DNA of 64,000 nt, taken from Schmidtea nova. Its lineage: Eukaryota. Under the pieces are notes generated by a model. The model had not been told where the DNA came from, ran no database searches, and worked only from the letters and a program-made list of their open reading frames with translations. The stretch spans positions 37,014,001-37,078,000 of the forward strand of contig CM097883.1 of the NCBI GenBank assembly GCA_044892505.1. Direction: 5' to 3'. A program made the position numbers and the translations under genes. This document shows positions 37,018 to 62,771 of the stretch, piece after piece (the first letter of the stretch is position 1; the number at the start of each line of letters is the position of its first letter).

Positions 37018-38082
37018 CCGATCCGAAAATCACAACAGACACACTGTTTTTTAACTTACACAAAACCTACAATTTTTATTATCAAGACTAAACTTTGATT
37101 TTAAGAACACTTTTCTGTGACTTAAGAGTACATTTTGAAATCTTATTCTCGCACCGGAAGATAACTACGAAGTAAAATTTGTTTGATTTTTTATTATGTA
37201 AATTTTGATATGTACCATGATTTCATTTATTAAAGTTTATTTCTGTATTTAATTATTTTATTTTATCATCATTATTTATCATGCATATAGTTATGCTTCC
37301 TAGGCTGCTAACGCGGCGAGGGAGTCCGAGTCGTCGTTGTGGGGCTTCACGGTCTCACATGGCGGTTCAACCTTTTTATTTTTTTTATCAATTTAGTAGT
37401 TTGAACCAGTTGAATTAAATCAGGAGAGGTTGAAAATTTAAATTTAACCCAGACGTTTATTAGCGAGAGTGAAGAGTCTTGATGGTAAATTAATTCCATG
37501 CTTATTTAGTCGAGTAAAATCATAAGTCACGAAATATCAATAATACGATCAAGTCCAGACGGTTTTCTGGCGATAATTAAAAATCATCATTCGGTTGTAC
37601 AGAGGGCGTATCATAGCAGGCAGCAGGGAAGGTCTACTAAGATGCCAGGAGGGGTAAAGTACCCGATAGACGTCAGGTACCCGAGACAAAGATGTCGACA
37701 CACTAGGGTTAAATTTGAGTACGAGAGAGCAGGTGTAGCATTACAAGTTATGAAATTTTTTCAAGTTAATCGATCGAAATGGTGATTTTCAATGGAGGTC
37801 AAGGTACAGGATATCGCAACTGCGTGACAGAGACTAGTAAATTCCAATCTAATAAAACTGAAAATTTGTAAATTCTAAAAATATTCTTATGCCGATCGCT
37901 GTACATAGCGCGGTAATTCAAATTAATCTTATCCTGATCGTCGTACATGGCACAGGGAAAACAAATATCTTATCCGACCGTGGTATATCGCGGCGAGGAT
38001 TTAATAATGAAATTGTATTAACTAAAAGAATTGAGATTAAATAGAATTTATATTCAAATTTTTTAAATAAAATAAACGACAG

Positions 38083-38559
38083 ATGCCGACATCGTTGAAC
38101 GAAAAGTTAACGCGGATTCGGAACTCAGGAAAGGAGGACAGGGCGAATGGATGGGCAAATCAGCTCAAGGAGTTGCCCCAGCCAATTCTGCGGACCATCA
38201 ACGCCCAGGCATATAAGTGGCGACGCGGATTCAATCTAAAATGCCCGTTTTCCATCTGGGTTGGAGGAAACGATCAGGTACTCTACCGGGGAGGACCGAA
38301 TTGGCCACTTTCGCAAAGGCCTTATCCACCGAAATTTGGGCAGATGATCATAGTGATAAACGACGTGGAAGGACGACCGAATCGGATAATTTATTGGGGA
38401 CACATCCTTCGCCGAGAGTTATGCAAATTAGGACTGCAAGCGTTCTTACCGCGGAAACCGTTTGGCAAGGAATGCCAGGAGGGACAACCTCCGTTTTCGT
38501 GGGCTCGACTTCGACAGATGCCAATCAACCACGAACTACACAGCCTATTTCGGCAATAA
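38083..38559 (+). CDS. Family X ORF A, 158 aa, unknown function
   Basis: Intact; ATG directly after acceptor acag; homologue at 10980-11520 conserves WRR.F...PF, WPL and PFG. Confidence 0.75.
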   Translation: MPTSLNEKLTRIRNSGKEDRANGWANQLKELPQPILRTINAQAYKWRRGFNLKCPFSIWVGGNDQVLYRGGPNWPLSQRPYPPKFGQMIIVINDVEGRPNRIIYWGHILRRELCKLGLQAFLPRKPFGKECQEGQPPFSWARLRQMPINHELHSLFRQ

Positions 38560-38732
38560 ATTCTGTGAAAATGATATTTCATAAATAAAATCCTATTATT
38601 AAATCCGTGGTCTTTGTTCTAACTTTTATATTGTTAAGTTTATCATGTTCTTAACGTAATAATAATTGACTTTTACTGAAAATATAAAATGTTTTAACAG
38701 CGGCAAATCATTTAATTTAAATCCATTACAGA

Positions 38733-39329
38733 ATGAATACCGATATTACACAAAGGGAGCTTGAAAAGATGTGGAGAATCCGGAGAGCCCAGGACAAGGA
38801 ATTGGGTCTCCTCAAGGAACAACTATCCAAAGCCTAGGCGCAAGTCACCTATTTGCGCAAAAGCTGGTTCGCTCCGGCTCGAATGAAGGAGCAGATTGGG
38901 AAAACCGAGCGTGCCCAGCGAACAGCAGAAGACTATAAAATGGAATGGGAAGCTACCAAAATCGAGCTTCGGAAGTGCCTCCATTCCGTGACAGCCTCTT
39001 ATATCGAAAGGGAACTGCGAGATCAAATCCGACCGGTCACATATCAAGAATGGACGGCGGAAAAGAAGAGCGTAAACTCGATCGGCACGGACGTCGACGA
39101 TCTCATTGGAATTTGTAACAAGCCAGTTCCATCAATAAATCCAGCCACCCAAACTGCCAATGCTCACCAGAAACGTAAGCGCATAGGGCAGAAGAGGCAA
39201 CGGCAAAGAAAGTTGTTCGCTCAACGATTGCAGAACCAAGTCGACGGCTTGCACAAATTGACAGAGGAGGAACTATTAGAAGAAATATTTCCCCCAGCCG
39301 GAGTGTTTACTGGTTTAATTGAAAAATAA
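38733..39329 (+). pseudogene. Family X ORF B, ~198 codons with one TAG at 38835; coiled-coil plus Arg/Lys-rich tail
   Basis: ATG one base after acceptor ccattacag; LRKSWF..ATKIELRKCL..LRDQIR..KRKRIGQKRQRQRKLF; homologue at 10073-10642. Confidence 0.8.
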
Positions 39330-39568
39330 ATGAATTCTCGTATTATTGTCATTGTTGTTGTTTATCTAAAATAGTTTAGTTAATAGAATAAATAATAAGA
39401 TACCTGTAATATAAAAAATATAAAATTATAATACAAAATACATAAGAAAGGTAAATAAATAATTAAATAAGCACTATGTTAGAAAACATCAGGCAGAATG
39501 AGTGATGTCAAAGATAAATTTTCTGAAAGTTTATTGTGGAGTACATAGCAGATGATTAAAGCGTAAGT

Positions 39569-39637
39569 CCTTCTAACGGCAGCAATGAACCCGTAAACAT
39601 AAATGGGGAGTAGTACTAGCAATAGTGCTCACCTGCC
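39569..39637 (+). ncRNA. Candidate conserved structured RNA motif (three-way junction), copy 2
   Basis: ggcag/ctgcc (with tga/tca), cccgt/atggg and agtact/agtgct stems; aligns to 6303-6371. Confidence 0.5.
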
Positions 39638-42619
39638 CATCATTGTTTAATCACCATGCGCATCACCAACTTGATTATCTAGGGAAATAATCAAGGGCGC
39701 TTGAGTGTATAATTGAAAATTTATGTATGATCATGGATGAGGGATCCCTAGCCATTTGTTAGAACCTTTTTCATCTAACCCCTCCATGAACCCAGCACAT
39801 ATAAGTTGTTGTTTCACTCAAAAATGCGATGACTGTCTTTATTTCCTGCAGTATATAGAATTTTGCAACTTTATTCAGCGTTTAGATCTTACTTTTTGTC
39901 GCACACTCAGCGCCCCATAATAATCAAAAAAATTGTTGAAAACGCACTTATTGAGTGCTATTTATGGTTCATTTATTCTTTAATGTATGTTTTCCATTCA
40001 AAAATAGAAAGTATGGAACAAGAAAAAAATTCCTTAATGGAAATAAGCGAAATATTATTTTCCATAGAAGAAATATTTATACAAAGAAGAGATAAGGAAT
40101 TTATTCCATTAAAAGTAAAAGAAATTATTCACTCTAATAACGATCAATCGAGAAGCCAGTAATAAAAAATGATTTAATTCACGTATATGAAAGAGGATTA
40201 GAATATTTAAAGTTGTGGACTTACTACTTGGATGAATTTAAAGTCTTTAAATGGATGTTGCTAAGAAGTAAGCCAGAGTGGGACGAAATCCAAGATACAG
40301 TACAATATTTATCAAAAAAAGAGTAAATATAAATGAATCATTATTGTTTGATCAATCTATAAGGTTAAATCATTTTTTATACCAAAAAATACCTTGTGAG
40401 GAATTTTCAAAAAACACAGTGCGGATAAATGGACAGGTTATTTTAAAAGTTGGAATTTTATAATTATTGCTTAAATAATAAAGAGCTTTTATTAGAAATT
40501 AGAAATAAAGCTAAATATCAGTTTGAATAAGTATTTATATATTATGTATTGTTATTTTGCATACAATTTGAAATTGTATTTTAATTTTGTTTTTCAAAAA
40601 TTTTGAATTTAATGTTTTGTTTAATTTTTTATTTTAATTAAAATAAATAACTATATTTTTTTGTAATTTTGTTCTTTTATTTTTTAATTAAAAAGTGAAG
40701 CGACTTATTTTCGAGTAGTTTTTGAATTTTCATACCCTCTATTTTGTTGTATTCATTTTTAAATGTTATCAGTATGGTAACCCTAATTGCACCTAAAAAT
40801 CAATACTATGGTGTGAAGTACTTTGTTTCATCGAAAATCTGAACAATTCTACTTGTAAACATAATTTGCATTTTTGCATTTTTTTACACTCATAAATAAT
40901 GAAATGAAACATACATCACAAGTTTCAACAATACTACCTGAATATCATGTTTGTACTCTGTTAAACATTTTTGACAAAAATTCTATTTTTAAAAAGCACA
41001 TTTATTTAGAATTGTAATATAAAATTAAATACTTACAAATATCAAGTAATATTTAGTCCAACTTATAAAATCTTTTGCCTTGTATTAGTCCAACTTTCAA
41101 TGAAGATACGAAAGAGTCGTGGTCATAAATATTATTTGTCTTTTCACAAAGAATATTTTTTGCAAAAACAATTTATCAAAAAAGTTAATTTTTTCTATTT
41201 TATAGGGAGAGTGGGGCTCGAAAATTTATGGAGAGTTAGAACCCTCACAAGTTTTGAGCGAAAGCGATAACTCAGTGTTTCCCAACCTGGGCGATTTGAA
41301 ATTTTAGGTGGGCGATGTTTTTACCATGTTGTTTTTGCATATGTCAACCTTTTTGCAAATCTCAGAGATACGAAAACTTTGTTATAATTCATTTTAAAAA
41401 TGTTCATCTTTCAAAATCTCTATATTTTTGCAAACAATTTTTCAAAAATTTCAAGCCCTCAAACTATAGTGCGATAAAACAAAACACAAAATTGCACTTT
41501 TTGGTACCATTTGTCACGCAAAATCGTGATTAGGACTTTTAGAGTGCAACGGGAACATTGTGCTTAAAAGTGCCCTCACTACATTGAAAAATAAAAAGTG
41601 CACCTTAGCACAGTGAAAATTTTCACACTGCACCTAAACATAAATATTCAAATTTACAAAGTTTTCACGCGTTTTTTGAAAAGTGGTATATATTATTAAT
41701 AGAGGGTAGAGGCGCTATAACTGGTAGTGAGTTAGAAAGCTTACATCTACCTACTTTTAATGTATTTTATTTATTGAAAAAATAGTTTTATAAAATATCG
41801 AATTTAAGATCATCCATTATAAACCATATTCATTCATTATTCCTTCGAGGTTATTCATAGTCATATTTATTAATTGTAATTCATTATCAATCATTATTAT
41901 ATACCAATACAAAATTTTGATAGTTCCTCAAACAATTCTTGTAAATCTAACACCGAAGAGGAACTGCTGTGCAATTATAAAACTCATGAGTTGCATAAGT
42001 GCATTTGAAAACATAACTAAGAGACGTTTATGTTAGGGATTGCAATACCGGTAGTACAGTTTGAGTCATTTTTTACATGTTTATATTAAAAATTGAAATA
42101 ATTGTCAAGCTGTTATTTACAATCAAAATTTTCTACAATTAATTTTCTATTAATTTATCTGCATATAATTGCTTGCTTCTGTTTCTTTCTCTATTTTCGT
42201 AAGTTTTGATTTAAATTTTTATAATTGTGGTTATTGATTTTTTTCATATTGAATTAACCTTCAACGAATAAAATAAAACCATTATCAATTCGTCTCCTTG
42301 GAAATAATTTGAACAAGTCATTGCAGCAACTGTATATAAGGGTTGCATATTCATTAAAAAAGTTCATATAGAATCAACTTGCTGAAAAGAAATTCAACTG
42401 ATATTCATCTGATATTGATATAACAAAAGAGACCAGCTACAATCACGTCATACTTTTTAAAAAATGTCGATGATTTCTTATCAGTTGTTATTTCTTGTAT
42501 GATGATTAAAAATTCTTTGCGAATAAGTAAATTACACATTGATGATTTTGACAGTCAATGACTCTAAACAGAAATTGATGGGGGTTCAACAAACTTGAGC
42601 AACTGATGAAAGATTACCG

Positions 42620-45492: not shown

Positions 45493-47526
45493 CGGTTCCC
45501 TATCATTTGGTCGAACATCAGGTGGTCAAACATCAAGTGGTCGAAGTGTACTTGGTCGAGATTCGTTTCGTCGCTGTTCATTTGGTCGAGAATTCATGTA
45601 GTCGAAATTTATATATTCGAAAGTCATGTAGTCGAATATTTGATGTTTAAGTGACGATAATTTAGTAGATATTAGTTTGGGATTTAAAACTTTAACTATT
45701 TAATTTAAATTTTAAATATAAATCATTTCCAATAATTTATCCCATACAAAATGTCGAGATTAAACTTTGTCATTAGTAGTAAAGGAAAAGANNNNNNNNN
45801 NNNNNNNNNNNNNNNNNNNNNNNNNNNNNNNNNNNNNNNNNNNNNNNNNNNNNNNNNNNNNNNNNNNNNNNNNNNNNNNNNNNNNNNNNNNNNNNNNNNN
45901 NNNNNNNNNNNNNNNNNNNNNNNNNNNNNNNNNNNNNNNNNNNNNGCAAAACATATTGGCGAAGTGAAATAAGAAGCTGCAACTCAAGAATGCATAGCAC
46001 GGGCGATGTTATTGTAAGAACACCAAGAGATCCTCACCGACATGCTCCATCTTGTGATCGTGATTCTGCAGCAATTGTGGCTGGACAAGTACGTCGAAAA
46101 GCATTAGATTGTGAGAGTACAACGAAAAACATTGTACAACAAGCGATGTCTCAGATACCTGTCGTTGTTGCACCTGCACTGGCTTCAACTTCAAATTGTA
46201 TGAAGGAAACGAAAAGCAGCACTATCTTATTAAGATACAGAAAGGGAGCTTCATGAAAGAATTATTGTTCCAAGGAAGCTTCAACGCACATGCGACGATA
46301 CTGAATTCATGAAATTTTCTTCAGAATATATGATTTTATTTGCGTCTCCTCTTGGAATAGATATGCTCAACATGAACAGAATTGGTTTGCAGATGGAACA
46401 TTCTATGAAGCTCCAAAAGAATATACTCAGCTCTACACCATTCATGTTCTACTTGAAAATTCTGAAACTATCTAGTCGTCTACGCTCTTTTAAAGAATAA
46501 ATCAAGCGAATCGTATGCTGCCATGTTTCAGTTTTTGCGGGATATGAATTCGGATAAACCCTTAAAACCTGCAAACATCACCGTAGACTTTGAACAAGCA
46601 GCTATGACAGCATTTAAAGAAACATTCCTAGACATCGAGATACATGGATGTTTCTTCAATCTGTGTCAAAATATTTGAAAAGGAATTCAAGGATCTGGTC
46701 TTCAGATTTTGTATGATTCAGATGCTGAATTTGCATTGAAGACTCGATGTCTAGCAACAATCCCATTTTTACCAACGGAAGACATCATTCGCGGATTCGA
46801 ACTTTTAACACATGACGAAGATTATCCGGATGAAACAGACCAAAAAGTTGATTATTTCGAATCAAATTACATCGGTAACATCGGCCGACGTTCCACAAGA
46901 AGACGTCCGAATTTTCCCCATTCTACGTGGTCACAGTATGAACGAGTTAAAAATAGCCTTCAACGAACAACCAATTCACTAGAAGGGTGGCATAACGCAC
47001 TGAAAGGTGTCATCCAAAAGGCACATCCGTCAATGGCAGCATTCGTAACTAAGCTACGACTAGAAGAGTCAATTGTAGCACGCAAAATTGAAAGAGTCAT
47101 TGCTGGTCATTCTACGAAATGTAAGCCAAAGAAATACGAGGCCGTCGACACTAGAATTAAGCTATTGGTGGATGGATATGATTCAAACAATATCAAGCAG
47201 TTTCTGAGAAGCATTTCTCATAACATCGCGTATTGAATGAATTACTTTTGTACTTTTGTTGGTTATATGTTTTATAATACAAAATAAATGACTGTATTAC
47301 TGTTTTTTTTCTTGTGTATTTTTTATACAAAATTCTTTTTACTTTTTAATCATATGTTTGTTTTATTTTATCTTTAATAAATTTCGACAAAGAGATTTTC
47401 GACTTGTTTGTGTTTCGACCAATTGATCTTACACGAAATGAACTTCGACCAAATGAACTTTCGATCAAATGAATTCGGCGAAATGAACTTCGACGAAATG
47501 ATGTTCGACGAACTGATCGATTACCG
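45493..47526 (+). mobile_element. MULE/Mutator element with repeat-built TIRs; transposase (45751-47236) pseudogenised
   Basis: TIRs cggt..atca.tt.gtcgaacatca with tggtcga/tcgacca repeats; KTYWR..HRH, WFADGTF, TVDFEQAA, GCFF, YFESNYIG, RTTNSLEGWH. TSD not found. Confidence 0.9.
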
Positions 47527-49599: not shown

Positions 49600-52562
49600 T
49601 GTTGAGATAGAAACGGTTAAAAAAGCAGGAAGTAATAAATAAAATTAAATAATATAAAAGTAAAATGAAATAAAATAAAAAAACAGTTGAAAAAGAAGAA
49701 AAAACAATAATTATAACAAATTAAAAGAATATTAGCAAGTTAAGAGAATTAAACGGAATAAAAGTTAAAAAGTACAAAAATATGAAAAAAGTAAAGAAAT
49801 TAGAAAAGAAATATTTATTTTTAAAAATAAATATTTATTTATGAAAATAAATCAAAGTTTAGAAGAAAAACAGAGAATTAAATAAATAAATCAAAAATAA
49901 CTAATTATATAATCTGGCCAATCGCAGGCCCAAATCGATTTTGATTGGCTGACTAAGTGCTGAAATCAGTTCGAAAAAACACATACCAAAGAGCATAGTT
50001 AACCATTATTTTAACTGAATAAAACCTTTTTGTTATTTTAACCAACACATAACTCTTATTTTAAAAAAACGATTTTCAATTGCGATTACTTCAACCTGCA
50101 AACCCTTAGTGAAATCAATTTAAAAAAAATATTTTTGTGAGATAATTCTTAATTCGTGTCTGGATGCAATCAGAAGAAGATTGTAAGTAATTGTAATTTA
50201 CAAATATATATTTTAATTGAAATCTTATTTGTTTTGTTTATTGTGTTTTCTTTCATGTTTTATTCAAATTAAGTTTTTCGAGGTTGTGGACGACCAGATG
50301 GGTTTTGCCTCAAGTGTAAAACGGATGGCGTGATCGTCGGGTAATAATAATAAAGGTTACTGATCATAGTAGAGGCGAGGGTGCAGAAATTCGATGTTGA
50401 CCAGTCGAAACTAACAACGTGTCCCAGAAGTGAATTTATTACATTAAAAATTTCATATCTCGTGAGGAAAACCTTTACAAAACTCAGTAGTGCAGCAGAT
50501 GAGAAACTTAGGATAAATGAAATATGGGCAGTAGTCGTGAAGACAGATTCATTTAGATAATTTATTCCTAAAGTAAAATCCCATTTCTTTTAATTGCAAA
50601 GTGCCGATCTAAACAGAATTTTAATTTCACCAGCTAGGAAAATTTATTGTGATCGAATTAATAGAAACCCCATATCACCGGGAATGAAACAGTAATTGAT
50701 ATTGATAGAGAGCCTATCCCATACCACTAGCGTAAAATACCGATAGTGGTCAAGTAAAATTCCTTCAGAGAACATGCTGCTTGCGAAAGTAGAGAATACT
50801 ACAAAAAGGAGTCATTCAGCTAATTACCCCTGAGTAAAAATCAAATTACATTAAGTGCAGTCTGAATTTCCAACGCAAGCTAAATGGATAAAAGCTATCT
50901 CTCCATTATTACGCCTAATTATCGAGTGGGCGGATAATGGGCAGATAGTGTGTTGTTTCCGACTACCCATGATCAAATAGAGTAATTGCTCATAACGAAT
51001 ATGAGTGTGCGATCACCGAAAAATCGATTAATTGATTCAAAGGAGAGTGAGATAATTGCGACAGAAATTGCGAATCGTCAAGTGAGACCCTAATCCACCA
51101 TAATTAGGCCTTATCTGATTAACTAATAGAAAAATCCATTAGTGACCGAAATTTTCAGACATATTATATCCATTAAGTGCACTAATTTAGTGGAGACGAC
51201 CGAGTAAAATTAAATAGAAAAATGAATATATATAAAACTTAAATTAACAATTAATTTATAGAAACTTGACAAAGGAATAAGGAACCAATTCAATCACCGA
51301 TTTTCAGCTCAGGGGAGGAATGTAGATATAGAAAAAGAGATCGCTTTAGAGAGAGACAGAACGAAAATTACTTTTGGCGATACATTAAAAAAGAAATATC
51401 CCAACTGAGCTCGTCCAGGAGATCTTCAGAGAACACACAGAAACCTTCAAACAAATGGGCGAGTCTCCAAAGTCTAATATACACATTGATAGCCCCGACC
51501 ATATCATCTGGATCGGCGGTCTACCCAGCAGACAAACCTAAGTACTTCATCAAACCCAGAGCGACATCCCGTGTCTCGATGTGATACAATACCAAGGAAA
51601 TATTTCTGAAAAGAGTTCAGAAGGATCGGCAGGGAAATTTATAATCCCGATATGGATTCGCTTTAAACTAAGACATATTTTTATTGGAGACTCTGCTGGG
51701 CTCAACAGATCTTCTTTCCAAATACAGCATAAATATAAAAACAATTAAAAATTACAGTAAATATACTGTTCACTATTAAATGCTGAATCTTTTATTACAT
51801 GATAAATAATTTTTCTTTTACTTATGGTAAACTGAATAATTTTGGAAAATGATTAAATATGGAAATGATTAAAATAAATTTTGAACTGACTAAAATATTC
51901 TTGAAGGGGATTAAAATATATTTGAAAGGGATTAAAATATATTTGTAAATGATTAAATTAATATGAAAACCCTGTAACGTATTTTATATAATATTTTTAA
52001 ATTAAATTTTAAAAAATCTCATTCTGTAACCAATTGTTTAAATTGACCATTTCAAGGTCATCAAAAATATGACTATAGACAAGCATCAAATTCAGTGTAT
52101 CGATTTACTAGTAAGCGAAATTTTAGTCGCCATTTTGAATTTAATATAAATCTTGTTGATGTTAGTAGGTAATCGGATCATGCTCCAACTGGTAGTTATT
52201 TTATTTTGTATTGAAATCCTCGGTAATGCCTGTACAAGTAAATGTTTTAGTTAATAAATGTTTTGTTTCAGCCTTGTTTTATCGAGACATCCGAAGATTT
52301 TTAAAATCAACCACATACATTTTATTTATTTATTAACCAGCAAGGCAATAACTTAATACATATGACCTATCAGTGTAATGTTCTGTGGTCACACCAATCC
52401 ATTCAATCAAAGAGTGTTTTGGAGTATTATTGAATTTATTTGTAAAATTACTTAAAATTAAATTCGGGGAAACAAAAATAAAATTGATGAATAGGACACC
52501 GAGGTATTCTGCCTTTTGGTGTGGTTGCCGATTCTAACCATTTCGATATGTTATTTACTACA
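49600..52562 (+). mobile_element. Probable family X copy 3 (diverged, ~3 kb)
   Basis: Starts tgttgag; paired CCAAT boxes and aaatcagtt at 49915-49970; GC-rich mini-exon at 50280; gtgtaatgttctgtgg.cacac at 52374 shared with copy 1; 3' region resembles the end of copy 2. Confidence 0.5.
51307..51745 (+). pseudogene. Decayed ORF, possibly a distant ORF A homologue
   Basis: After acceptor ttttcag: ..TLKKK(I)PTELVQEIFREHTETFKQMGES..HIIWIGGLP; weak match to VPKDIQKQVERH / LPQPILRTI..IWVGG. Confidence 0.35.
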
Positions 52563-52700: not shown

Positions 52701-52742
52701 TAGAAAAATTTAGTGTATATATATATATATATATAAATATAT

Positions 52743-55452
52743 GGTGCTAGGACAAAATGTCCGCGGACAAAATGTCACGGACAAAATGGCACGGGACAAA
52801 ATGGCACGGGACAAAATGGCACGGGACAAAATGGCAGGGGACAAAATGGCACGGGACAAAATGGCACGGACAAAATTTCCGCGGAAAAAATCGCGGGAAA
52901 AAAACACAGACAAATGTCACCATTATTATTCGCCCGGCCGGCTAGTAAAACATAAACCAAGCCAGGTTCCAACCAAAGACATTGACTGGGAGACGTCACT
53001 GCTTCTTATTTCCGTGTCAACTTAAAATTACTCAACTCTGCAATCTGGTGACAGATTTCTTGAACGCATTGGCATAAAATTTCTATAAACTAAGTAATTT
53101 CTAATTGAATAAAAAAGGTAGACACACTTAGAAAGTTATTTTCAGCTCGGAAGTTTTATTTCTATTTTTTATTAGTTCAAGTAATTCTGGTTGCATTATC
53201 AAAACATCTCATATTCTGTATAAAACTGCTACTTAGCTTCGAAATAATTTTATATGAAACGCCACAATGCAGATGAAGCAGCATATACATTTCTAAACGG
53301 GATAAAATGTATTATATCGCGGATTTGAATTCAAAAATGTATAGTCAAAATATCCCCATTATTCACATTTTAATTACCTATCTCGTCGCGGTGCGGTTAT
53401 TGTTATATACAAAGCAAGTTTTGGTTTCATCACGTGAGTACGTATTGGCCTCAGATTACAACACAGCTATGCAAATTAAAATTTACTTTACATATGATTA
53501 TTTGTGTCGCCTTAATAAATTAATGTTATGACTATAATAAGAGCATGCGCTCGATTTAAAATGAGGAGGCTGGCCTTATAAATATCTTTACACTATATAT
53601 AAACGCTTACAGAAACTATAATTTATAATATTACATGGACAACATATACATAATTTACATTATTTATTATCTTTAAATAAAAATTTATTTTTATATTTAA
53701 CTGTGTTTAAATAAATTAAATAAAGCTACCACAATGTTAGAATTCGTTACATCACAGAAAGGAAATAGTAAGCTTATCGTTCAAGGTTACTTTTTTACTA
53801 AGCATTCGGCGAACAATGATGGAAAAAGCTTTTGGCGCTGTGAAAAAAGAACGTGCACAGTGCGAGTGCACACAAAAGATGATGAAATTGTCCATGCTGT
53901 TGCAACTCACAACCACACGGTAACTCATGGTCAAGTAGAGGTCGAAAGAGCACGAGCCGGCATGAAAAGAGGTGAAACAACTGAAGAAAAAACACGATCA
54001 ATTGTTCAGAATGAATTGATGAATGTTCCAGTTTCAGCAGCGCATCTTCTTCCAAAACGAACAACATTGGCACGAGATGTACGACGACATCGTCAGAAGA
54101 TGGGACCAAACGATCACGATGATATAATGAGATATTCTTTGACGCAGAGCAACAGGCCTTTCATACGTATTAGGAGAGACGACATGATCATTTTCGCAGC
54201 TGAGGATGATTTGGAATTCCTTTCCAGATGTCAGCACTGGTTTGCTGATGGAACATTTCAAGTGAGTCCAAATGGATATGACCAACTTTACACGATTCAT
54301 GGTTTTATTAATGGCGGAGTTTTCCCGGTAGTATATGCACTACTATCTTCAAGAACAGAAGAAGCATATCAACATCTGCTTCAGGAAGTTCTTATATTGA
54401 AAGCAGGTCTGAATCCAGATTCAATTATGGTTGATTTCGAACTAGCAACAATTAGATCATTCCAGAAACCATTCCCGGCAACAACAATCACCGGATGCAT
54501 GTTTCACTTCGGTCAATGTCTTTGGAGGAAATTGCAAGCGGAAGGATTATCGGAACGTTACAGAAATGAACCAGATTTTGCACTTCTCATCAAACGACTT
54601 CTTGCTCTGGCATTCGTTCCACCACAGGATGTTATCGATTTGTTTGAACATTTACTCGAAGATCCAGCTTACCGTGACATAGAGGTTATCTGTGATTACA
54701 TGGAAGATAACTTCATTGGTAGATTAAGAAGAGCAAGAAGAGGGCCACCAAGATTCTCAATTCAACTTTGGAGTCAATTTTCTAGGGTAATCGATAAGCT
54801 GCCTCGCAGTAACAACGCAATCGAGGGTTGGCACAATGCATTCAACAACGTTGTCGGTTTCGCGCATCCGTCCACGACCAAACTTGCACGGAAACTACAA
54901 CAAGAACAACACAGCACTCAACTTCTTCGCCGTCAATTGGAACTGGGAACAACGGCTGGGAGGAAAAAGAAAACATACATCCGCGTCAACGAGGCATTGC
55001 ATGCCATGGTGACCGACTACAACAACCGAGATCCAATCACACATTTAGGAGACATTGCACGTGTTTTAAACATTAATGTTGTTTGACTTCATTAGTTATT
55101 TTCATTGATAAAGGACTCGATTATTTATTTTTAAAAGCGTTTTTAAAATAACCTAATAATGTTATAAGACTAAGCTATTTTATTAACTGAATATCTAACA
55201 CTAAATTAATATAGGCTAGATATAATTATTATAATAAAGTTAGATTAAATTTGATAAATGCATTATTGAAATATTTTCATTGTTTTTCTGTCTTATATTT
55301 TTTTCCGCAATTTTTTGTCTGTGAGTCCGTGACATTTTGTCCGTGACATTTTGTCCGTGCCATTTTGTCCCGTGCCATTTTGTCCTCATGACATTTTGTC
55401 CGTGACATTTTGTCCGCGGACATTTTGTCCGCGGACATTTTGTCCGGCCACC
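52743..55452 (+). mobile_element. Complete MULE/Mutator transposon with minisatellite TIRs
   Basis: TIRs ggtg..ggacaaaatgtccgcgg built of 13-14-bp ggacaaaatg(g/t)cac units; perfect 8-bp TSD aaatatat (52735-52742 / 55453-55460). Confidence 0.97.
53734..55086 (+). CDS. Intact MULE transposase (FLYWCH plus MULE DDE), 450 aa
   Basis: FWRCE..C..HNH; WFADGTF, IMVDFE, GCMFHFGQCLWRK, RSNNAIEGWH; no stops. Confidence 0.95.
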   Translation: MLEFVTSQKGNSKLIVQGYFFTKHSANNDGKSFWRCEKRTCTVRVHTKDDEIVHAVATHNHTVTHGQVEVERARAGMKRGETTEEKTRSIVQNELMNVPVSAAHLLPKRTTLARDVRRHRQKMGPNDHDDIMRYSLTQSNRPFIRIRRDDMIIFAAEDDLEFLSRCQHWFADGTFQVSPNGYDQLYTIHGFINGGVFPVVYALLSSRTEEAYQHLLQEVLILKAGLNPDSIMVDFELATIRSFQKPFPATTITGCMFHFGQCLWRKLQAEGLSERYRNEPDFALLIKRLLALAFVPPQDVIDLFEHLLEDPAYRDIEVICDYMEDNFIGRLRRARRGPPRFSIQLWSQFSRVIDKLPRSNNAIEGWHNAFNNVVGFAHPSTTKLARKLQQEQHSTQLLRRQLELGTTAGRKKKTYIRVNEALHAMVTDYNNRDPITHLGDIARVLNINVV

Positions 55453-56099
55453 AAATATATACCAGTCTTTACACTGCCTGGCTGTAAGATGCGAGGACGA
55501 ATATGTTACCGGCTTACAGTTTCCTAGTGAGTTACTCATTCGCCTGAAGTTTTGTCAAATCAAACTCGGTGCTCCCCAATTATTATTTTGTGAAACTCCG
55601 ATGTTTGAGTGAAGTGGTATAATGGGTACAAAAATACGGATGTCCATGTGTGATTTTGCAGAAAATCCTTATGTTATTTTATGTTTGCGCAAACTAAATT
55701 AGTCAAACCTAATCGTCATGCTACTGCAATGCGAGACTACATGCAGTTAATTTAACTTCTTGTGAACTGGGTTGCCTGTCGAAGTGCATTTATATAACAA
55801 TAAAATCTGTCGGTGTATTTATTCGTGTTCAATTTATATACTGTAGAAATTTGGATAAATGTCGATTCGCATTTTAATTGGTCAAACGGTATTTGAAGCC
55901 CTATGTATTCTCGATTATTATCATTAAAACGTTAAGCAGTCTATGGGCAGTTAATCGTTATTATTCCACAAATTTAGACTGAATGCCCATGTTTCTTTTA
56001 TTATGAATTTGTTTATCCTTATACTACTTGATGATGTCCTGTTTCGCGTATGGTAAATAAAATTAATTGAAATATCCACGCCTGGATTTACCTTTAGGT

Positions 56100-60200: not shown

Positions 60201-62771
60201 GCATTTCAAAGAGATACAATTAAATTTTAAAAAAATTTATTATAAAGGGTTGGAAAATTGAAATGTAAAATAATGACAATAAAAGAAAAAAATTAAATTT
60301 TACAAAGGATAAATATCTGAAAGAATAAAAAATCAGAAAATATTTTAGAAAAAATTATAAATTTTTAAGTTTTTATTTTATATTTTTAAATTTTTAACAA
60401 AGATCATTTTAAGAACAATTTAAAATTTAAAATTCATATTAATCAGATAAACATCCAATGAAAAAGAAGATAATTCACGAGAAAGAAACAGCGGAATGAA
60501 TGAAGATACCAGTTATTTGCCGAATTAGAGATTGGCAAGGATTATTTTATAATCGAAAATTTTCTCACTTAATAAAATTATTTATGCAGCAANNNNNNNN
60601 NNNNNNNNNNNNNNNNNNNNNNNNNNNNNNNNNNNNNNNNNNNNNNNNNNNNNNNNNNNNNNNNNNNNNNNNNNNNNNNNNNNNNNNNNNNNNNNNNNNN
60701 NNNNNNNNNNNNNNNNNNNNNNNNNNNNNNNNNNNNNNNNNNNNNNNNNNNNNNNNNNNNNNNNNNNNNNNNNNTAGCGATGCAAAAATAAGTAGAGCAC
60801 ACGTTTTCGACATCAGCACCTCCCAGTCAACCAAAGGGACCATCGGCAGCTGATGCACTGCCAGCCAGAATGTAGAAGATATACCACAGACAAAAACGAA
60901 CAATCGTAATAATTGAGTCAAAGCTAAAAGATTTCCTCAAATGGGATTTTCATTTTGCTCAAATCTACCGTGATTTGGTGAAAAATTAATCTGTGGAAAA
61001 ATAATGAATTTCCTTTTTATTATTTGTAATGTATTAGGAAGGGTGGTATTATTTATATGTACTTCACATTTAAAGGTGAATCCCGTAGGATCAAAAGGCT
61101 TATGTGACACGCTGAAATTATGCAACTAAATATAGAAATAGTGTAAGCCGTAAATTCAATCGTCACTTTAGGAATGGCTCCCATTGAACACAAGAAGCCA
61201 ATAAGACTGTACATACCTGTTAGATCAGCTGTGTGATGTAGACATCGGAAAATTGAAACACCGGGTCTTGGATATGAAAGCGAGATATTTTTCACCTCGG
61301 AAAATACGAGAGCAGACGAACAAACCGAGCGGGAAGTAATGACCATTGAAAACAATCAAATGAAACTCAGCATGAAATTTGTTAACAAAAATTCCGGAAA
61401 ATACGAATTTGAACAGGATAAATTACGAGAACAATTTTGAATTTATTTTTACTAAAATTATTTATTTAATATATAGAATCAATTTATAATTTTTTACAAA
61501 ATCATCTTATTTTAATTATAAAAACTGCGGATTTATTTATTGAGAACACTTCAAAAATATTTTAAATGTTTAAGTACGAGCTTTAAAAAATAGACAAATT
61601 AAGCAATAAATGGTTTCTAATTTGATATTATGACCTTTGCATAAAAGATTGTTAATACTTCATTTGTCAGTGTTTTATGGTAATTGTGATAATTTATTTT
61701 ATAAGGTCAATATCATTTTTTTAAATCAATTTATTTTTATTAAAAATTGTGTTATATCAATTTACAATTAGGACTTTAAAATATTTTAATTTACGATAAA
61801 TTTAAGAAGATAAGAAAACCTCCATGAAAAAACTGTCTATAAAGTTTGTTACGTCAAATATATTTTTGAAAATTTTTCTAAGTCTAAATTAAGTAGCTCA
61901 AATATAAAAAACTTGAAAATTTTTCTAAGTAAGAATTAACTATTAAGTGACACAACACTTTGTGACTCACATGGCAATGTAAGTGCAAGTTTAATAAAAA
62001 CAATGCAATCAAGCTGCAAGAATAACAAAGGTANNNNNNNNNNNNNNNNNNNNNNNNNNNNNNNNNNNNNNNNNNNNNNNNNNNNNNNNNNNNNNNNNNN
62101 NNNNNNNNNNNNNNNNNNNNNNNNNNNNNNNNNNNNNNNNNNNNNNNNNNNNNNNNNNNNNNNNNNNNNNNNNNNNNNNNNNNNNNNNNNNNNNNNNNNN
62201 NNNNNNNNNNNNNNNNNNNNNNNNNNNNNNNNNNNNNNNNNNNNNNNNNNNNNNNNNNNNNNNNNNNNNNNNNNNNNNNNNNNNNNNNNNNNNNNNNNNN
62301 NNNNNNNNNNNNNNNNNNNNNNNNNNNNNNNNNNNNNNNNNNNNNNNNNNNNNNNNNNNNNNNNNNNNNNNNNNNNNNNNNNNNNNNNNNNNNNNNNNNN
62401 NNNNNNNNNNNNNNNNNNNNNNNNNNNNNNNNNNNNNNNNNNNNNNNNNNNNNNNNNNNNNNNNNNNNNNNNNNNNNNNNNNNNNNNNNNNNNNNNNNNN
62501 NNNNNNNNNNNNNNNNNNNNNNNNNNNNNNNNNNNNNNNNNNNNNNNNNNNNNNNNNNNNNNNNNNNNNNNNNNNNNNNNNNNNNNNNNNNNNNNNNNNN
62601 NNNNNNNNNNNNNNNNNNNNNNNNNNNNNNNNNNNNNNNNNNNNNNNNNNNNNNNNNNNNNNTTTAAAATTTTCACTGGTCTATAAATTGAAAATATAAT
62701 AAAAATTTGGACAAGAAAAAAGTAAATTTGATAATATTAAAATTTATTTAATAGCATTTATTTAGCATTTA

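What the first reader, a model, noticed from the sequence alone, without database searches (positions are those of the whole stretch)
39569..39637. Conserved three-way-junction RNA motif with covarying stem in the 3' part of family X (also 6303-6371, minus)
Seen: a 69-nt non-coding block is about 70% identical between two copies whose flanks do not align. Both can fold as P1 (g)gcag..tga / tca..(c/t)tgc, P2 ccc(gt)..ggg, and P3 agtact/agtgct versus agtaacc/ggttgct. Loops change while pairing is kept; the unpaired ccttcta.c leader and the gaa and a.t linkers are conserved. It lacks the hammerhead core (CUGANGA..GAAA) and I do not recognise it as twister, pistol or HDV-like. Inference: a functional cis RNA element, such as a packaging/dimerisation signal, 3'-end or decay-blocking element, or an unrecognised ribozyme. 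Two sequences are too few to prove covariation.
Basis: partly seen in the sequence, partly recalled or inferred. Interest (0 to 1): 0.8.

Follow-up and report, generated by a model that had tools for sequence, protein, structure and literature searches.

The report
Conserved RNA hairpin ending an orphan gene family
Two very old, diverged copies of an unknown two-gene unit in an AT-rich invertebrate-like genome share one 70-base non-coding island that is better conserved than their proteins and holds a hairpin kept by matching changes, but with only two copies its job, and the proposed three-armed fold, cannot be proven.

Summary
The sequence facts hold. Blocks at 39569-39637 (+) and 6303-6371 (-) are 70% identical (49/70 columns), and their flanks are not alignable. 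Both lie in the same orientation about 240-290 nt behind the last ORF of a real but orphan two-ORF family, "X". The X proteins are 32-45% identical and their third codon positions are saturated at 30-36%, so the block is the best conserved part of the family.

One stem, P3 (7 bp), is solid. It has three compensatory pairs and a pairing probability near 1 in both copies, with or without flanks. P1 and P2 consist only of invariant or one-sided positions. In copy B the three-way junction is 5.4 kcal/mol worse than the minimum-energy fold. With two sequences the covariation is not significant (56 of 500 shuffles reach it).

There is no Rfam match at E up to 10, no tRNA, no hammerhead core and no codon-position signature. 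I found no third copy in the window and no true match in the viral, metagenome or prokaryote scans. The X proteins have no relatives among 1.84 billion representatives.

Best reading: a strand-specific cis-acting RNA element of the X transcript, a hairpin with conserved single-stranded flanks that is probably bound by a protein. The exact role is unknown.

The parts
39569..39637 (+). Block A: conserved non-coding island (leader, P1, P2, P3)
6303..6371 (-). Block B: second copy of the island
   Evidence: (46.1 bits, E 4e-10)
39612..39629 (+). P3 hairpin of A: 7 bp with a 4-nt loop. This is the only stem with compensatory support.
   Evidence: pair probabilities 0.75-1.0, also with 80-nt flanks
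6310..6328 (-). P3 hairpin of B: 7 bp with a 5-nt loop. The inner three pairs all differ from A and all still pair.
39578..39582 (+). P1 5' strand of A, pairing with 39633-39637. Proposed only; there is no covariation.
39590..39608 (+). P2 of A: CCC/GGG stem with a variable loop. The stem is invariant between copies.
39642..39646 (+). Short conserved AUUGU just 3' of the block (in B at 6298-6302, minus strand). It is complementary to the conserved CAA of the P3 loop. This is the last trace of homology.
38083..38559 (+). Family X copy A, ORF1 (158 aa, intact)
   Evidence: no Pfam, PDB or word-search relatives
38733..39329 (+). Family X copy A, ORF2 frame (199 codons, one in-frame stop). Predicted all-helical with a basic C-terminal helix.
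   Evidence: no relatives
39330..39568 (+). AT-rich spacer (26% GC) between the ORF2 stop and block A
10980..11459 (-). Family X copy B, ORF1-like region (two in-frame stops)
10073..10642 (-). Family X copy B, ORF2-like region (two in-frame stops)
   Evidence: (32% over 82 aa and 45% over 42 aa, E 7e-20)
9789..9897 (-). Piece of B's 3' spacer between the N run (9898-10037, not filled) and the hAT insertion
6374..9780 (+). Nested hAT-type transposon that separates B's ORFs from block B. Its 8-bp target duplications are at 6366-6373 and 9781-9788 (7/8 identical).

Best explanation
The block is a cis-acting RNA element carried on the sense transcript of an orphan two-ORF unit, family X: ORF1, spacer, ORF2, an AT-rich spacer of about 240-290 nt, then the block, after which homology ends.

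Its working core is a 7-bp hairpin (P3). The stem sequence of P3 is free to change as long as it pairs. P3 is presented between strictly conserved single-stranded stretches: the CCUUCUA leader, UGAA, CAC and the CAA in the loop. Such a layout is typical of a site read by a sequence- and shape-specific RNA-binding protein. I infer that the block marks the X RNA for a step at or near its 3' end, such as RNP assembly or packaging, 3'-end definition or stability. X's own basic, helical ORF2 product is a candidate reader.

Shown: the conservation island, the strandedness, P3 covariation, the position behind ORF2 in both copies, and the absence of coding signal. Inferred: that the block is inside the mature transcript, the protein partner, and the function. 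P1 and P2 may close a three-way junction around P3, but that part is a model only.
For: - Family X is real. tblastx gives A 38808-39053 against B 10579-10334 at 32% over 82 aa, and A 39168-39293 against B 10216-10091 at 45% over 42 aa, E 7e-20, plus an ORF1 match.
- In these coding matches identity runs codon position 2 > 1 > 3, with third positions at 30-36%. That means true coding sequence and saturated divergence. The block is 70% identical.
- Both blocks lie on X's sense strand, 239 nt (A) and about 286 nt (B) behind the ORF2 stop. The B figure counts the 140-N run at face value and sets the nested hAT aside. The hAT has terminal inverted repeats and an 8-bp target duplication.
- P3 has 3 of 7 pairs changed on both sides and 100% of cells paired. 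Slid controls pair at 47% or less. P3 pair probability is near 1 in both copies, with and without flanks.
- Sense folds are -18.8 and -17.0 kcal/mol, against -13.8 and -13.6 for the antisense strand.
- Differences are spread 5/5/5 over codon positions in every frame, and all frames are closed within the block.
- Only two copies exist in the window, and both are tied to X.
Against: - There are only two sequences. The covariation measures are reached by 56/500 shuffles. Given that all six inner P3 bases changed, pairing of all three has roughly a 9% chance by my own arithmetic.
- P1 and P2 have no covariation and are not favoured thermodynamically in B or in longer context.
- It is not shown that the block is transcribed or lies inside the mature mRNA. 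In A all four canonical poly(A) hexamers of the 3' region lie upstream of the block.
- Both copies carry in-frame stops: A has 1, B has 4 across its two ORFs. The family may therefore be decaying.
- The link between B's ORFs and block B runs across an N run whose true content is unknown.
- The z-scores of the folds are modest, -1.96 and -0.92.
Confidence: 0.45

Rival explanations
1. The block is the start of a short terminal exon. An acceptor-like AG lies 1 nt in front of the block in both copies. The AT-rich spacer would then be an intron, and the 5' half of the block would encode the last 8-14 residues plus a stop. Conservation would come from coding and splice signals, and P3 would lie in the 3' UTR.
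For: - The block (48% GC) and the 200 nt after it in A (40%) are exon-like in composition, while the spacer before it is 26% GC.
- Two frames stay open from the block start to a stop at the same column in both copies.
- Other X ORFs begin directly behind acceptor-like sites.
Against: - There is no third-position bias: differences are 5/5/5 in every frame, unlike the real coding matches.
- The site in A has no pyrimidine tract.
- No convincing shared donor lies at the end of ORF2.
- The best conserved 3' half and the covarying P3 lie behind every possible stop.
Confidence: 0.15
2. The block is a DNA-level site. It would be the terminal recognition sequence of a mobile DNA unit (an end bound by a transposase, or a subterminal hairpin used in single-stranded DNA), or a binding site for a DNA-binding protein.
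For: - Homology between the copies stops within about 15 nt after the block, as at the end of a mobile unit.
- X lies in a transposon-rich stretch and is much richer in G+C (about 50% in the ORFs) than the 30% background.
- Both copies carry stops.
Against: - No inverted or direct copy of the block lies at the other end of X.
- No target duplications were found.
- X encodes no recognisable transposase, Rep or integrase.
- The stem keeps pairing through G-U wobble pairs, and the fold is clearly better on one strand.
- A double-stranded protein site would not need compensatory changes.
Confidence: 0.15
3. The block is a self-acting RNA device of a new class: a self-cleaving ribozyme or an exonuclease-stalling three-way junction. 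In the stalling model the leader and the P3 loop would form pseudoknots (leader UUC with junction GAA; loop CAA with the UUG in AUUGU just downstream).
For: - The order leader, P1, P2 hairpin, P3 hairpin, P1', short conserved tail matches in outline the flaviviral xrRNA layout described in PMC8374639.
- Unpaired junction nucleotides are conserved more strictly than stems.
- The two 3-nt complementarities exist in both copies.
Against: - No Rfam ribozyme or xrRNA model matches at E up to 10.
- The hammerhead core is absent.
- The three-way junction is not stable in B.
- Three-nucleotide complementarities are expected by chance, and none of them covaries.
Confidence: 0.07
4. The resemblance is a by-product: a fragment of an unrelated short repeat that landed near both X copies, or local gene conversion, with no function of its own.
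For: The region is full of transposons. 70% identity is ordinary for old repeats.
Against: - The block has the same orientation and nearly the same distance behind ORF2 in both copies.
- There is no other copy in 64 kb even with an unfiltered model search.
- The identical bases are patterned by structure, and the changed stem bases are compensatory.
Confidence: 0.08

Closest known systems
3'-tail stem-loops of stringent-type LINEs and their partner SINEs, read by the element's reverse transcriptase (from my own knowledge of that literature, not from a tool)
   Same: A short structured block sits at the very 3' end of the conserved unit. It is better conserved than the coding part, the stem is kept by pairing, and homology stops just behind it.
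   Different: X encodes no reverse transcriptase or endonuclease. No poly(A) or short-repeat tail follows the block. No target duplications were found. X shows intron- or acceptor-like sites.
Flaviviral exoribonuclease-resistant RNAs (xrRNA class 1), as described in PMC8374639
   Same: The size is about 70 nt. The element lies in the 3' untranslated region. On paper it is a three-way junction with an unpaired 5' leader and two hairpins, and short leader-junction and loop-downstream complementarities are possible.
   Different: No Rfam model matches. The junction is not thermodynamically favoured in copy B. The pseudoknots are 3 nt long and untested. The host is a cellular genome, not a flavivirus.
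Hammerhead ribozymes of retrozymes and Penelope-like elements
   Same: A three-helix junction associated with a repeated genomic unit.
   Different: No Rfam hammerhead hit was found.
Protein-bound 3'-UTR hairpins of cellular mRNAs (histone stem-loop, iron-responsive element, SECIS)
   Same: A short hairpin with conserved flanking or loop bases lies in the 3' region of paralogous genes and is more conserved than the neighbouring UTR.
   Different: No match to any of these Rfam families. The stem length, loop and flanks differ. X has no in-frame UGA pattern pointing to selenocysteine.

Membership tests
Any Rfam 15 family (4227 models, including hammerhead, twister, twister-sister, pistol, hatchet, HDV-like, SECIS, histone stem-loop and flaviviral xrRNA models) | Score at or above the family's gathering threshold, or at least E up to 10 with permissive filters | tested here: not met
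   The whole window at gathering threshold gave 0 hits. Copy A and copy B searched in short stretches at E up to 10 gave no hit on the block.
Hammerhead ribozyme | Conserved core strands in the junction (the two strings quoted in the finding) | tested here: not met
   The first core string is absent from the block plus or minus 30 nt on both strands in both copies. The junction strands read NNNUGAA, A-R-U and CAC.
Hammerhead ribozyme | Three helices meeting at the core | tested here: inconclusive
   Three helices can be drawn, but P1 and P2 are unsupported in B.
Flaviviral xrRNA (class 1) | Three-way junction plus a pseudoknot between the 5' end and the junction, and a second latch pseudoknot (PMC8374639) | tested here: inconclusive
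   A junction is drawable but not favoured in B. Complementarities of 3 nt exist in both copies but are invariant and short.
Flaviviral xrRNA (class 1) | Halting of a 5'-3' exonuclease, seen as an accumulated downstream RNA fragment | not testable with these tools
   No expression data are available.
LINE/SINE 3' tail | Partner element encoding a reverse transcriptase with the same tail | tested here: not met
   No RT domain in X. No other copy of the block in the window. The rest of the genome was not available.
LINE/SINE 3' tail | Poly(A) or short tandem repeats directly behind the tail, and target-site duplications | tested here: not met
   Sequence behind both blocks. The word search for duplications found only AT-rich chance words.
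tRNA or tRNA-like small RNA | Cloverleaf recognised by ARAGORN or the Rfam tRNA model | tested here: not met
Box C/D snoRNA | Box C and box D next to a terminal stem | tested here: not met
Only an E 1.2 chance hit to SNORD65 outside the block.
Protein-coding exon | Open frame with an excess of third-position changes | tested here: not met
   Differences are 5/5/5 in all frames, and stops occur within the block in all frames.

The most novel reading that the evidence does not exclude
The block is a self-contained RNA machine of a new class in a cellular genome. It would be either an exonuclease-stalling three-way junction, a cellular or mobile-element counterpart of viral xrRNAs (an open question raised in PMC8374639), or an unrecognised self-cleaving ribozyme. 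In either case it would define or protect the 3' part of the family X RNA.
Probability: 0.06. Interest if true: 0.8.

Novelty: new member of a known kind. Interest (0 to 1): 0.35.

Why it matters
If the element is real, it is a previously undescribed structured RNA motif. It is kept under stronger constraint than the two proteins of the unit that carries it, and that unit has no detectable relatives in 1.84 billion protein representatives. The motif would give a handle for finding all members of this orphan family in the source genome, since the RNA block is easier to detect than the proteins. It would also help to decide whether the family is a host gene pair or a mobile element. In the unlikely case of a decay-blocking or self-cleaving fold, it would extend those classes to a cellular genome. 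As it stands, it is a plausible but thinly supported cis element.

Tried and rejected
**Searches that found nothing**
- Rfam at gathering threshold and at E up to 10 on both copies gave nothing on the block. ARAGORN gave nothing.
- I looked for more copies with an unfiltered covariance-model search of the window and pattern scans of viral contigs and prokaryote genomes. None found a copy. The pattern scan of JGI metagenomes gave 2 hits, both ordinary bacterial coding sequence with no further likeness, so chance matches.
- A full-text search for the block's letters gave 0 papers.

**Family X proteins**
- There is no Pfam family and no meaningful PDB sequence match. The 6e-5 match to designed "Bagel" proteins covers 21 residues and is low-complexity.
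- Word searches gave 0 homologues and full HMMER on ORF2 gave 0.
- The exact products are not on record.
- AlphaFold2 single-sequence models were too poor for fold searches: pLDDT 47 for ORF1, and pLDDT 61 with pTM 0.22 for ORF2. I therefore ran no fold search.

**Organism**
- MULE transposase relatives are unnamed ENA/Logan contigs at 74-91% identity, a freshwater mussel at 56% and rotifers at about 39%.
- The species stays unknown. It is an AT-rich aquatic invertebrate at best guess.

**Readings rejected**
- Antisense exon-intron boundary. The reverse complement of the block's 3' end looks like a splice donor in both copies, but all three antisense frames upstream of it are closed in A and are not conserved.
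- Small-RNA gene made by RNA polymerase III. There is no shared run of T behind the block.
- Promoter of a shared downstream gene. The downstream sequences are unrelated.
- Part of the hAT element. The block lies outside its terminal repeats and target duplication, and copy A has no hAT next to it.

These were the hammerhead core, box C/D, poly(A) hexamers, splice-site and some transposon-end or viral-origin consensus strings used for by-eye comparison.
- They are leads, not tests, and none is written out here.

Full report
**1. What is in the sequence**

The window has about 30% G+C and is full of eukaryotic DNA transposons: hAT with DUF4371, and MULE with a FLYWCH finger.

- MAFFT aligns them and nothing around them.
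- A 27-nt degenerate pattern from the 5' half occurs exactly twice, against 0 expected.
- The local alignment score of the block is 27, against 6.7 +/- 1.3 for shuffles.
- A covariance model built from copy A alone recovers copy B at 46 bits (E 4e-10). With filters off it recovers nothing else in the 64 kb.
- Identity is 49 of 70 columns.

**2. Family X is real, and the block is its best conserved part**

tblastx shows two protein-level matches between the region upstream of block A (plus strand) and 10-11.5 kb (minus strand). They are 32% over 82 residues and 45% over 42 residues (combined E 7e-20), plus a weaker match in an upstream ORF.

Copy A therefore reads:
- ORF1 at 38083-38559, intact;
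- an AT-rich spacer of 173 nt;
- the ORF2 frame at 38733-39329, with one in-frame stop;
- an AT-rich spacer of 239 nt;
- the block.

Copy B has the same order on the minus strand, with two in-frame stops in each ORF-like region. Between its ORF2-like end (10073) and its block (6371) lie an N run (9898-10037, left as it is) and a 3.4-kb hAT-type transposon (6374-9780). The transposon has terminal inverted repeats and an 8-bp target duplication that is 7/8 identical (6366-6373 and 9781-9788). Its insertion point is the 5' edge of the block. Setting that nested element aside, without joining anything, block B lies about 286 nt behind the ORF2 stop, against 239 nt in A.

In the coding matches nucleotide identity is 42-50%, with codon position 2 > 1 > 3 and third positions at 30-36%. 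The ORFs are thus truly coding and the copies are anciently diverged. Against that background a 70% identical non-coding block is an island under selection. The spacer before it and the sequence behind it are not alignable. Only a short AUUGU and a few more bases just behind it are shared.

**3. Structure**

Pair counting gives 15 pairs with 96.7% of cells paired.

- P3 (7 bp) has four invariant pairs and three pairs changed on both sides. A U-G pair is kept in both copies.
- P1 has one G-C to G-U change and one broken outer pair.
- P2 (CCC/GGG) never varies.

Controls:
- Sliding the partners drops pairing to 47% or less, with no compensatory pairs.
- The shuffle control reaches the observed values in 56 of 500 trials. 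With two sequences the covariation is suggestive only.

Thermodynamics:
- P3 has a pairing probability near 1 in both copies, alone and with 80-nt flanks.
- The full junction is near-optimal only for copy A in isolation.
- In B the junction is 5.4 kcal/mol worse than the minimum-energy fold (P1/P2 probabilities at most 0.03). With flanks P1 is not predicted in either copy.
- The sense strand folds better than the antisense strand: -18.8 and -17.0 against -13.8 and -13.6 kcal/mol.

The unpaired leader (8/9), J3/1 (3/3) and the loop CAA are conserved, while the P2 loop is not (6/13). The solid feature is therefore a hairpin set between conserved single strands. The three-way junction remains a drawing.

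**4. What it is not**

- It matches no Rfam family at gathering threshold or at E up to 10 on either copy.
- It is not a tRNA.
- It has no hammerhead core and no box C/D strings.
- It is not coding. Differences fall 5/5/5 on the codon positions of every frame, and every frame closes inside the block.
- It is not part of the hAT element.
- It is not a promoter of a shared downstream gene.

**5. What family X is**

This stays open.

- Neither ORF has a Pfam family, a PDB relative or a word-search homologue. A full HMMER pass of ORF2 over 1.84 billion representatives returned nothing.
- Single-sequence models are weak. ORF1 has pLDDT 47. ORF2 is predicted as long helices, including a basic C-terminal helix, with pLDDT 61 and pTM 0.22.

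Features that look like a mobile or foreign unit:
- ORFs at about 50% G+C in a 30% genome;
- a purine-rich sense strand;
- stops in both copies;
- a transposon-rich neighbourhood;
- homology that ends right behind a structured block.

Features that look like a cellular gene pair:
- AT-rich spacers ending in good acceptor-like sites directly before the ORF starts;
- no reverse transcriptase, transposase, terminal repeats or target duplications.

One in-frame stop of the ORF2 frame falls at nearly the same aligned codon in both copies. I cannot explain this.

**6. Mechanism**

I commit, at 0.45, to a cis-acting RNA element on the X sense transcript. It is a hairpin whose stem may vary as long as it pairs, flanked by invariant single-stranded bases. 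That is the usual anatomy of a site read by an RNA-binding protein. Its place at the end of the conserved unit points to a 3'-end-related step: RNP assembly or packaging, 3'-end definition, or stability. X's own basic helical ORF2 product is a candidate partner (inference).

Rivals:
- a short terminal exon with its acceptor (0.15);
- a DNA-level terminal or binding site (0.15);
- a by-product repeat (0.08);
- a self-acting device, either an xrRNA-like stall or a ribozyme (0.07).

The outline (leader, P1, P2 hairpin, P3 hairpin, P1', short conserved tail) does resemble the flaviviral xrRNA layout described in PMC8374639. Two 3-nt complementarities that could form the two pseudoknots exist in both copies. 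They are invariant and short, and no model matches.

**7. Limits**

- More copies could not be obtained. The collections on hand hold no relative of X. The viral and prokaryote pattern scans found nothing, and the metagenome scan gave only two chance hits. The literature search for the letters was empty.
- The organism is not identified. The closest MULE relatives are unnamed environmental contigs, a freshwater mussel and rotifers.
- Whether the block is in the mature transcript is unknown. In A all canonical poly(A) hexamers of the 3' region lie upstream of it.

**8. Verdict**

- The block is a new, unclassified, probably functional RNA hairpin element of an orphan family.
- The three-way junction and any specific function are unproven.
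- Novelty: a new member of a known kind (cis-acting 3'-region RNA hairpins).
- Interest: 0.35.

**Slip noted:** They count as leads only and are not reproduced here.

Noticed in passing
window 6374-9780 (+), target duplications 6366-6373 and 9781-9788: A hAT-type transposon with terminal inverted repeats and an 8-bp target duplication (7/8 identical) is inserted exactly at the 5' edge of block B. Its ORFs (7168-9542) carry DUF4371 and the hAT dimerisation domain and are interrupted by one in-frame stop and one frame change. It holds an internal foldback at 6515-6840.
   Followed up: partly
window 52735-55461; ORF 53734-55086 (+): A MULE transposon with an intact 450-aa FLYWCH-MULE transposase is flanked by inverted arrays of 14-15-nt subterminal repeats. 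The closest relatives are unnamed ENA/Logan contigs (74-91%), a freshwater mussel (56%) and rotifers (about 39%).
   Followed up: partly
window 4280-5995 (-): A 571-aa open frame lies 300 nt downstream of block B on the same strand, which is striking in a 30% G+C sequence. It has no Pfam family, is not on record, and has no counterpart behind block A. A 70-nt stretch at 4352-4421 is 80% complementary to 52423-52492, next to the MULE.
   Followed up: partly
window 38080-38085, 38729-38735; 10643-10650 (-): The ATGs of X-A ORF1 and ORF2 lie 0-1 nt behind pyrimidine-AG acceptor-like sites. Copy B has a strong pyrimidine-tract acceptor-like site where its ORF2-like region starts. This fits cis- or spliced-leader trans-splicing of a two-gene unit, but it is untested.
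   Followed up: no
X ORF2 frame, copies A (38733-39329) and B (10073-10642, minus): One in-frame stop in each copy falls at nearly the same aligned codon, with coding-like sequence on both sides. It may be chance, a true ORF boundary or read-through. This is unexplained.
   Followed up: no
window 39627-39637 (-) and 6303-6313 (+): The reverse complement of the 3' end of the block reads like a consensus 5' splice donor in both copies. No conserved or open antisense exon precedes it, so I take it for coincidence.
   Followed up: partly
window 6110-6250 (-): Three tandem units of about 46 nt lie 60-190 nt downstream of block B. They are absent behind block A.
   Followed up: no
window 13813-14100 (+): A further ORF by eye resembles the N-terminal part of the hAT protein at 7168-7815, suggesting a second element of that kind upstream of X copy B. 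No scan or alignment was run.
   Followed up: no
window 26477-26810 and 27028-28280: There are 10-nt tandem arrays and a block of longer AC-rich repeats with strong negative GC skew. These are unrelated to the finding.
   Followed up: no
window 9898-10037, 19798-19976, 20548-21444, 45792-45945, 60593-60774, 62034-62662: These are runs of N. The first lies inside the 3' spacer of X copy B. None was filled or looked up.
   Followed up: no
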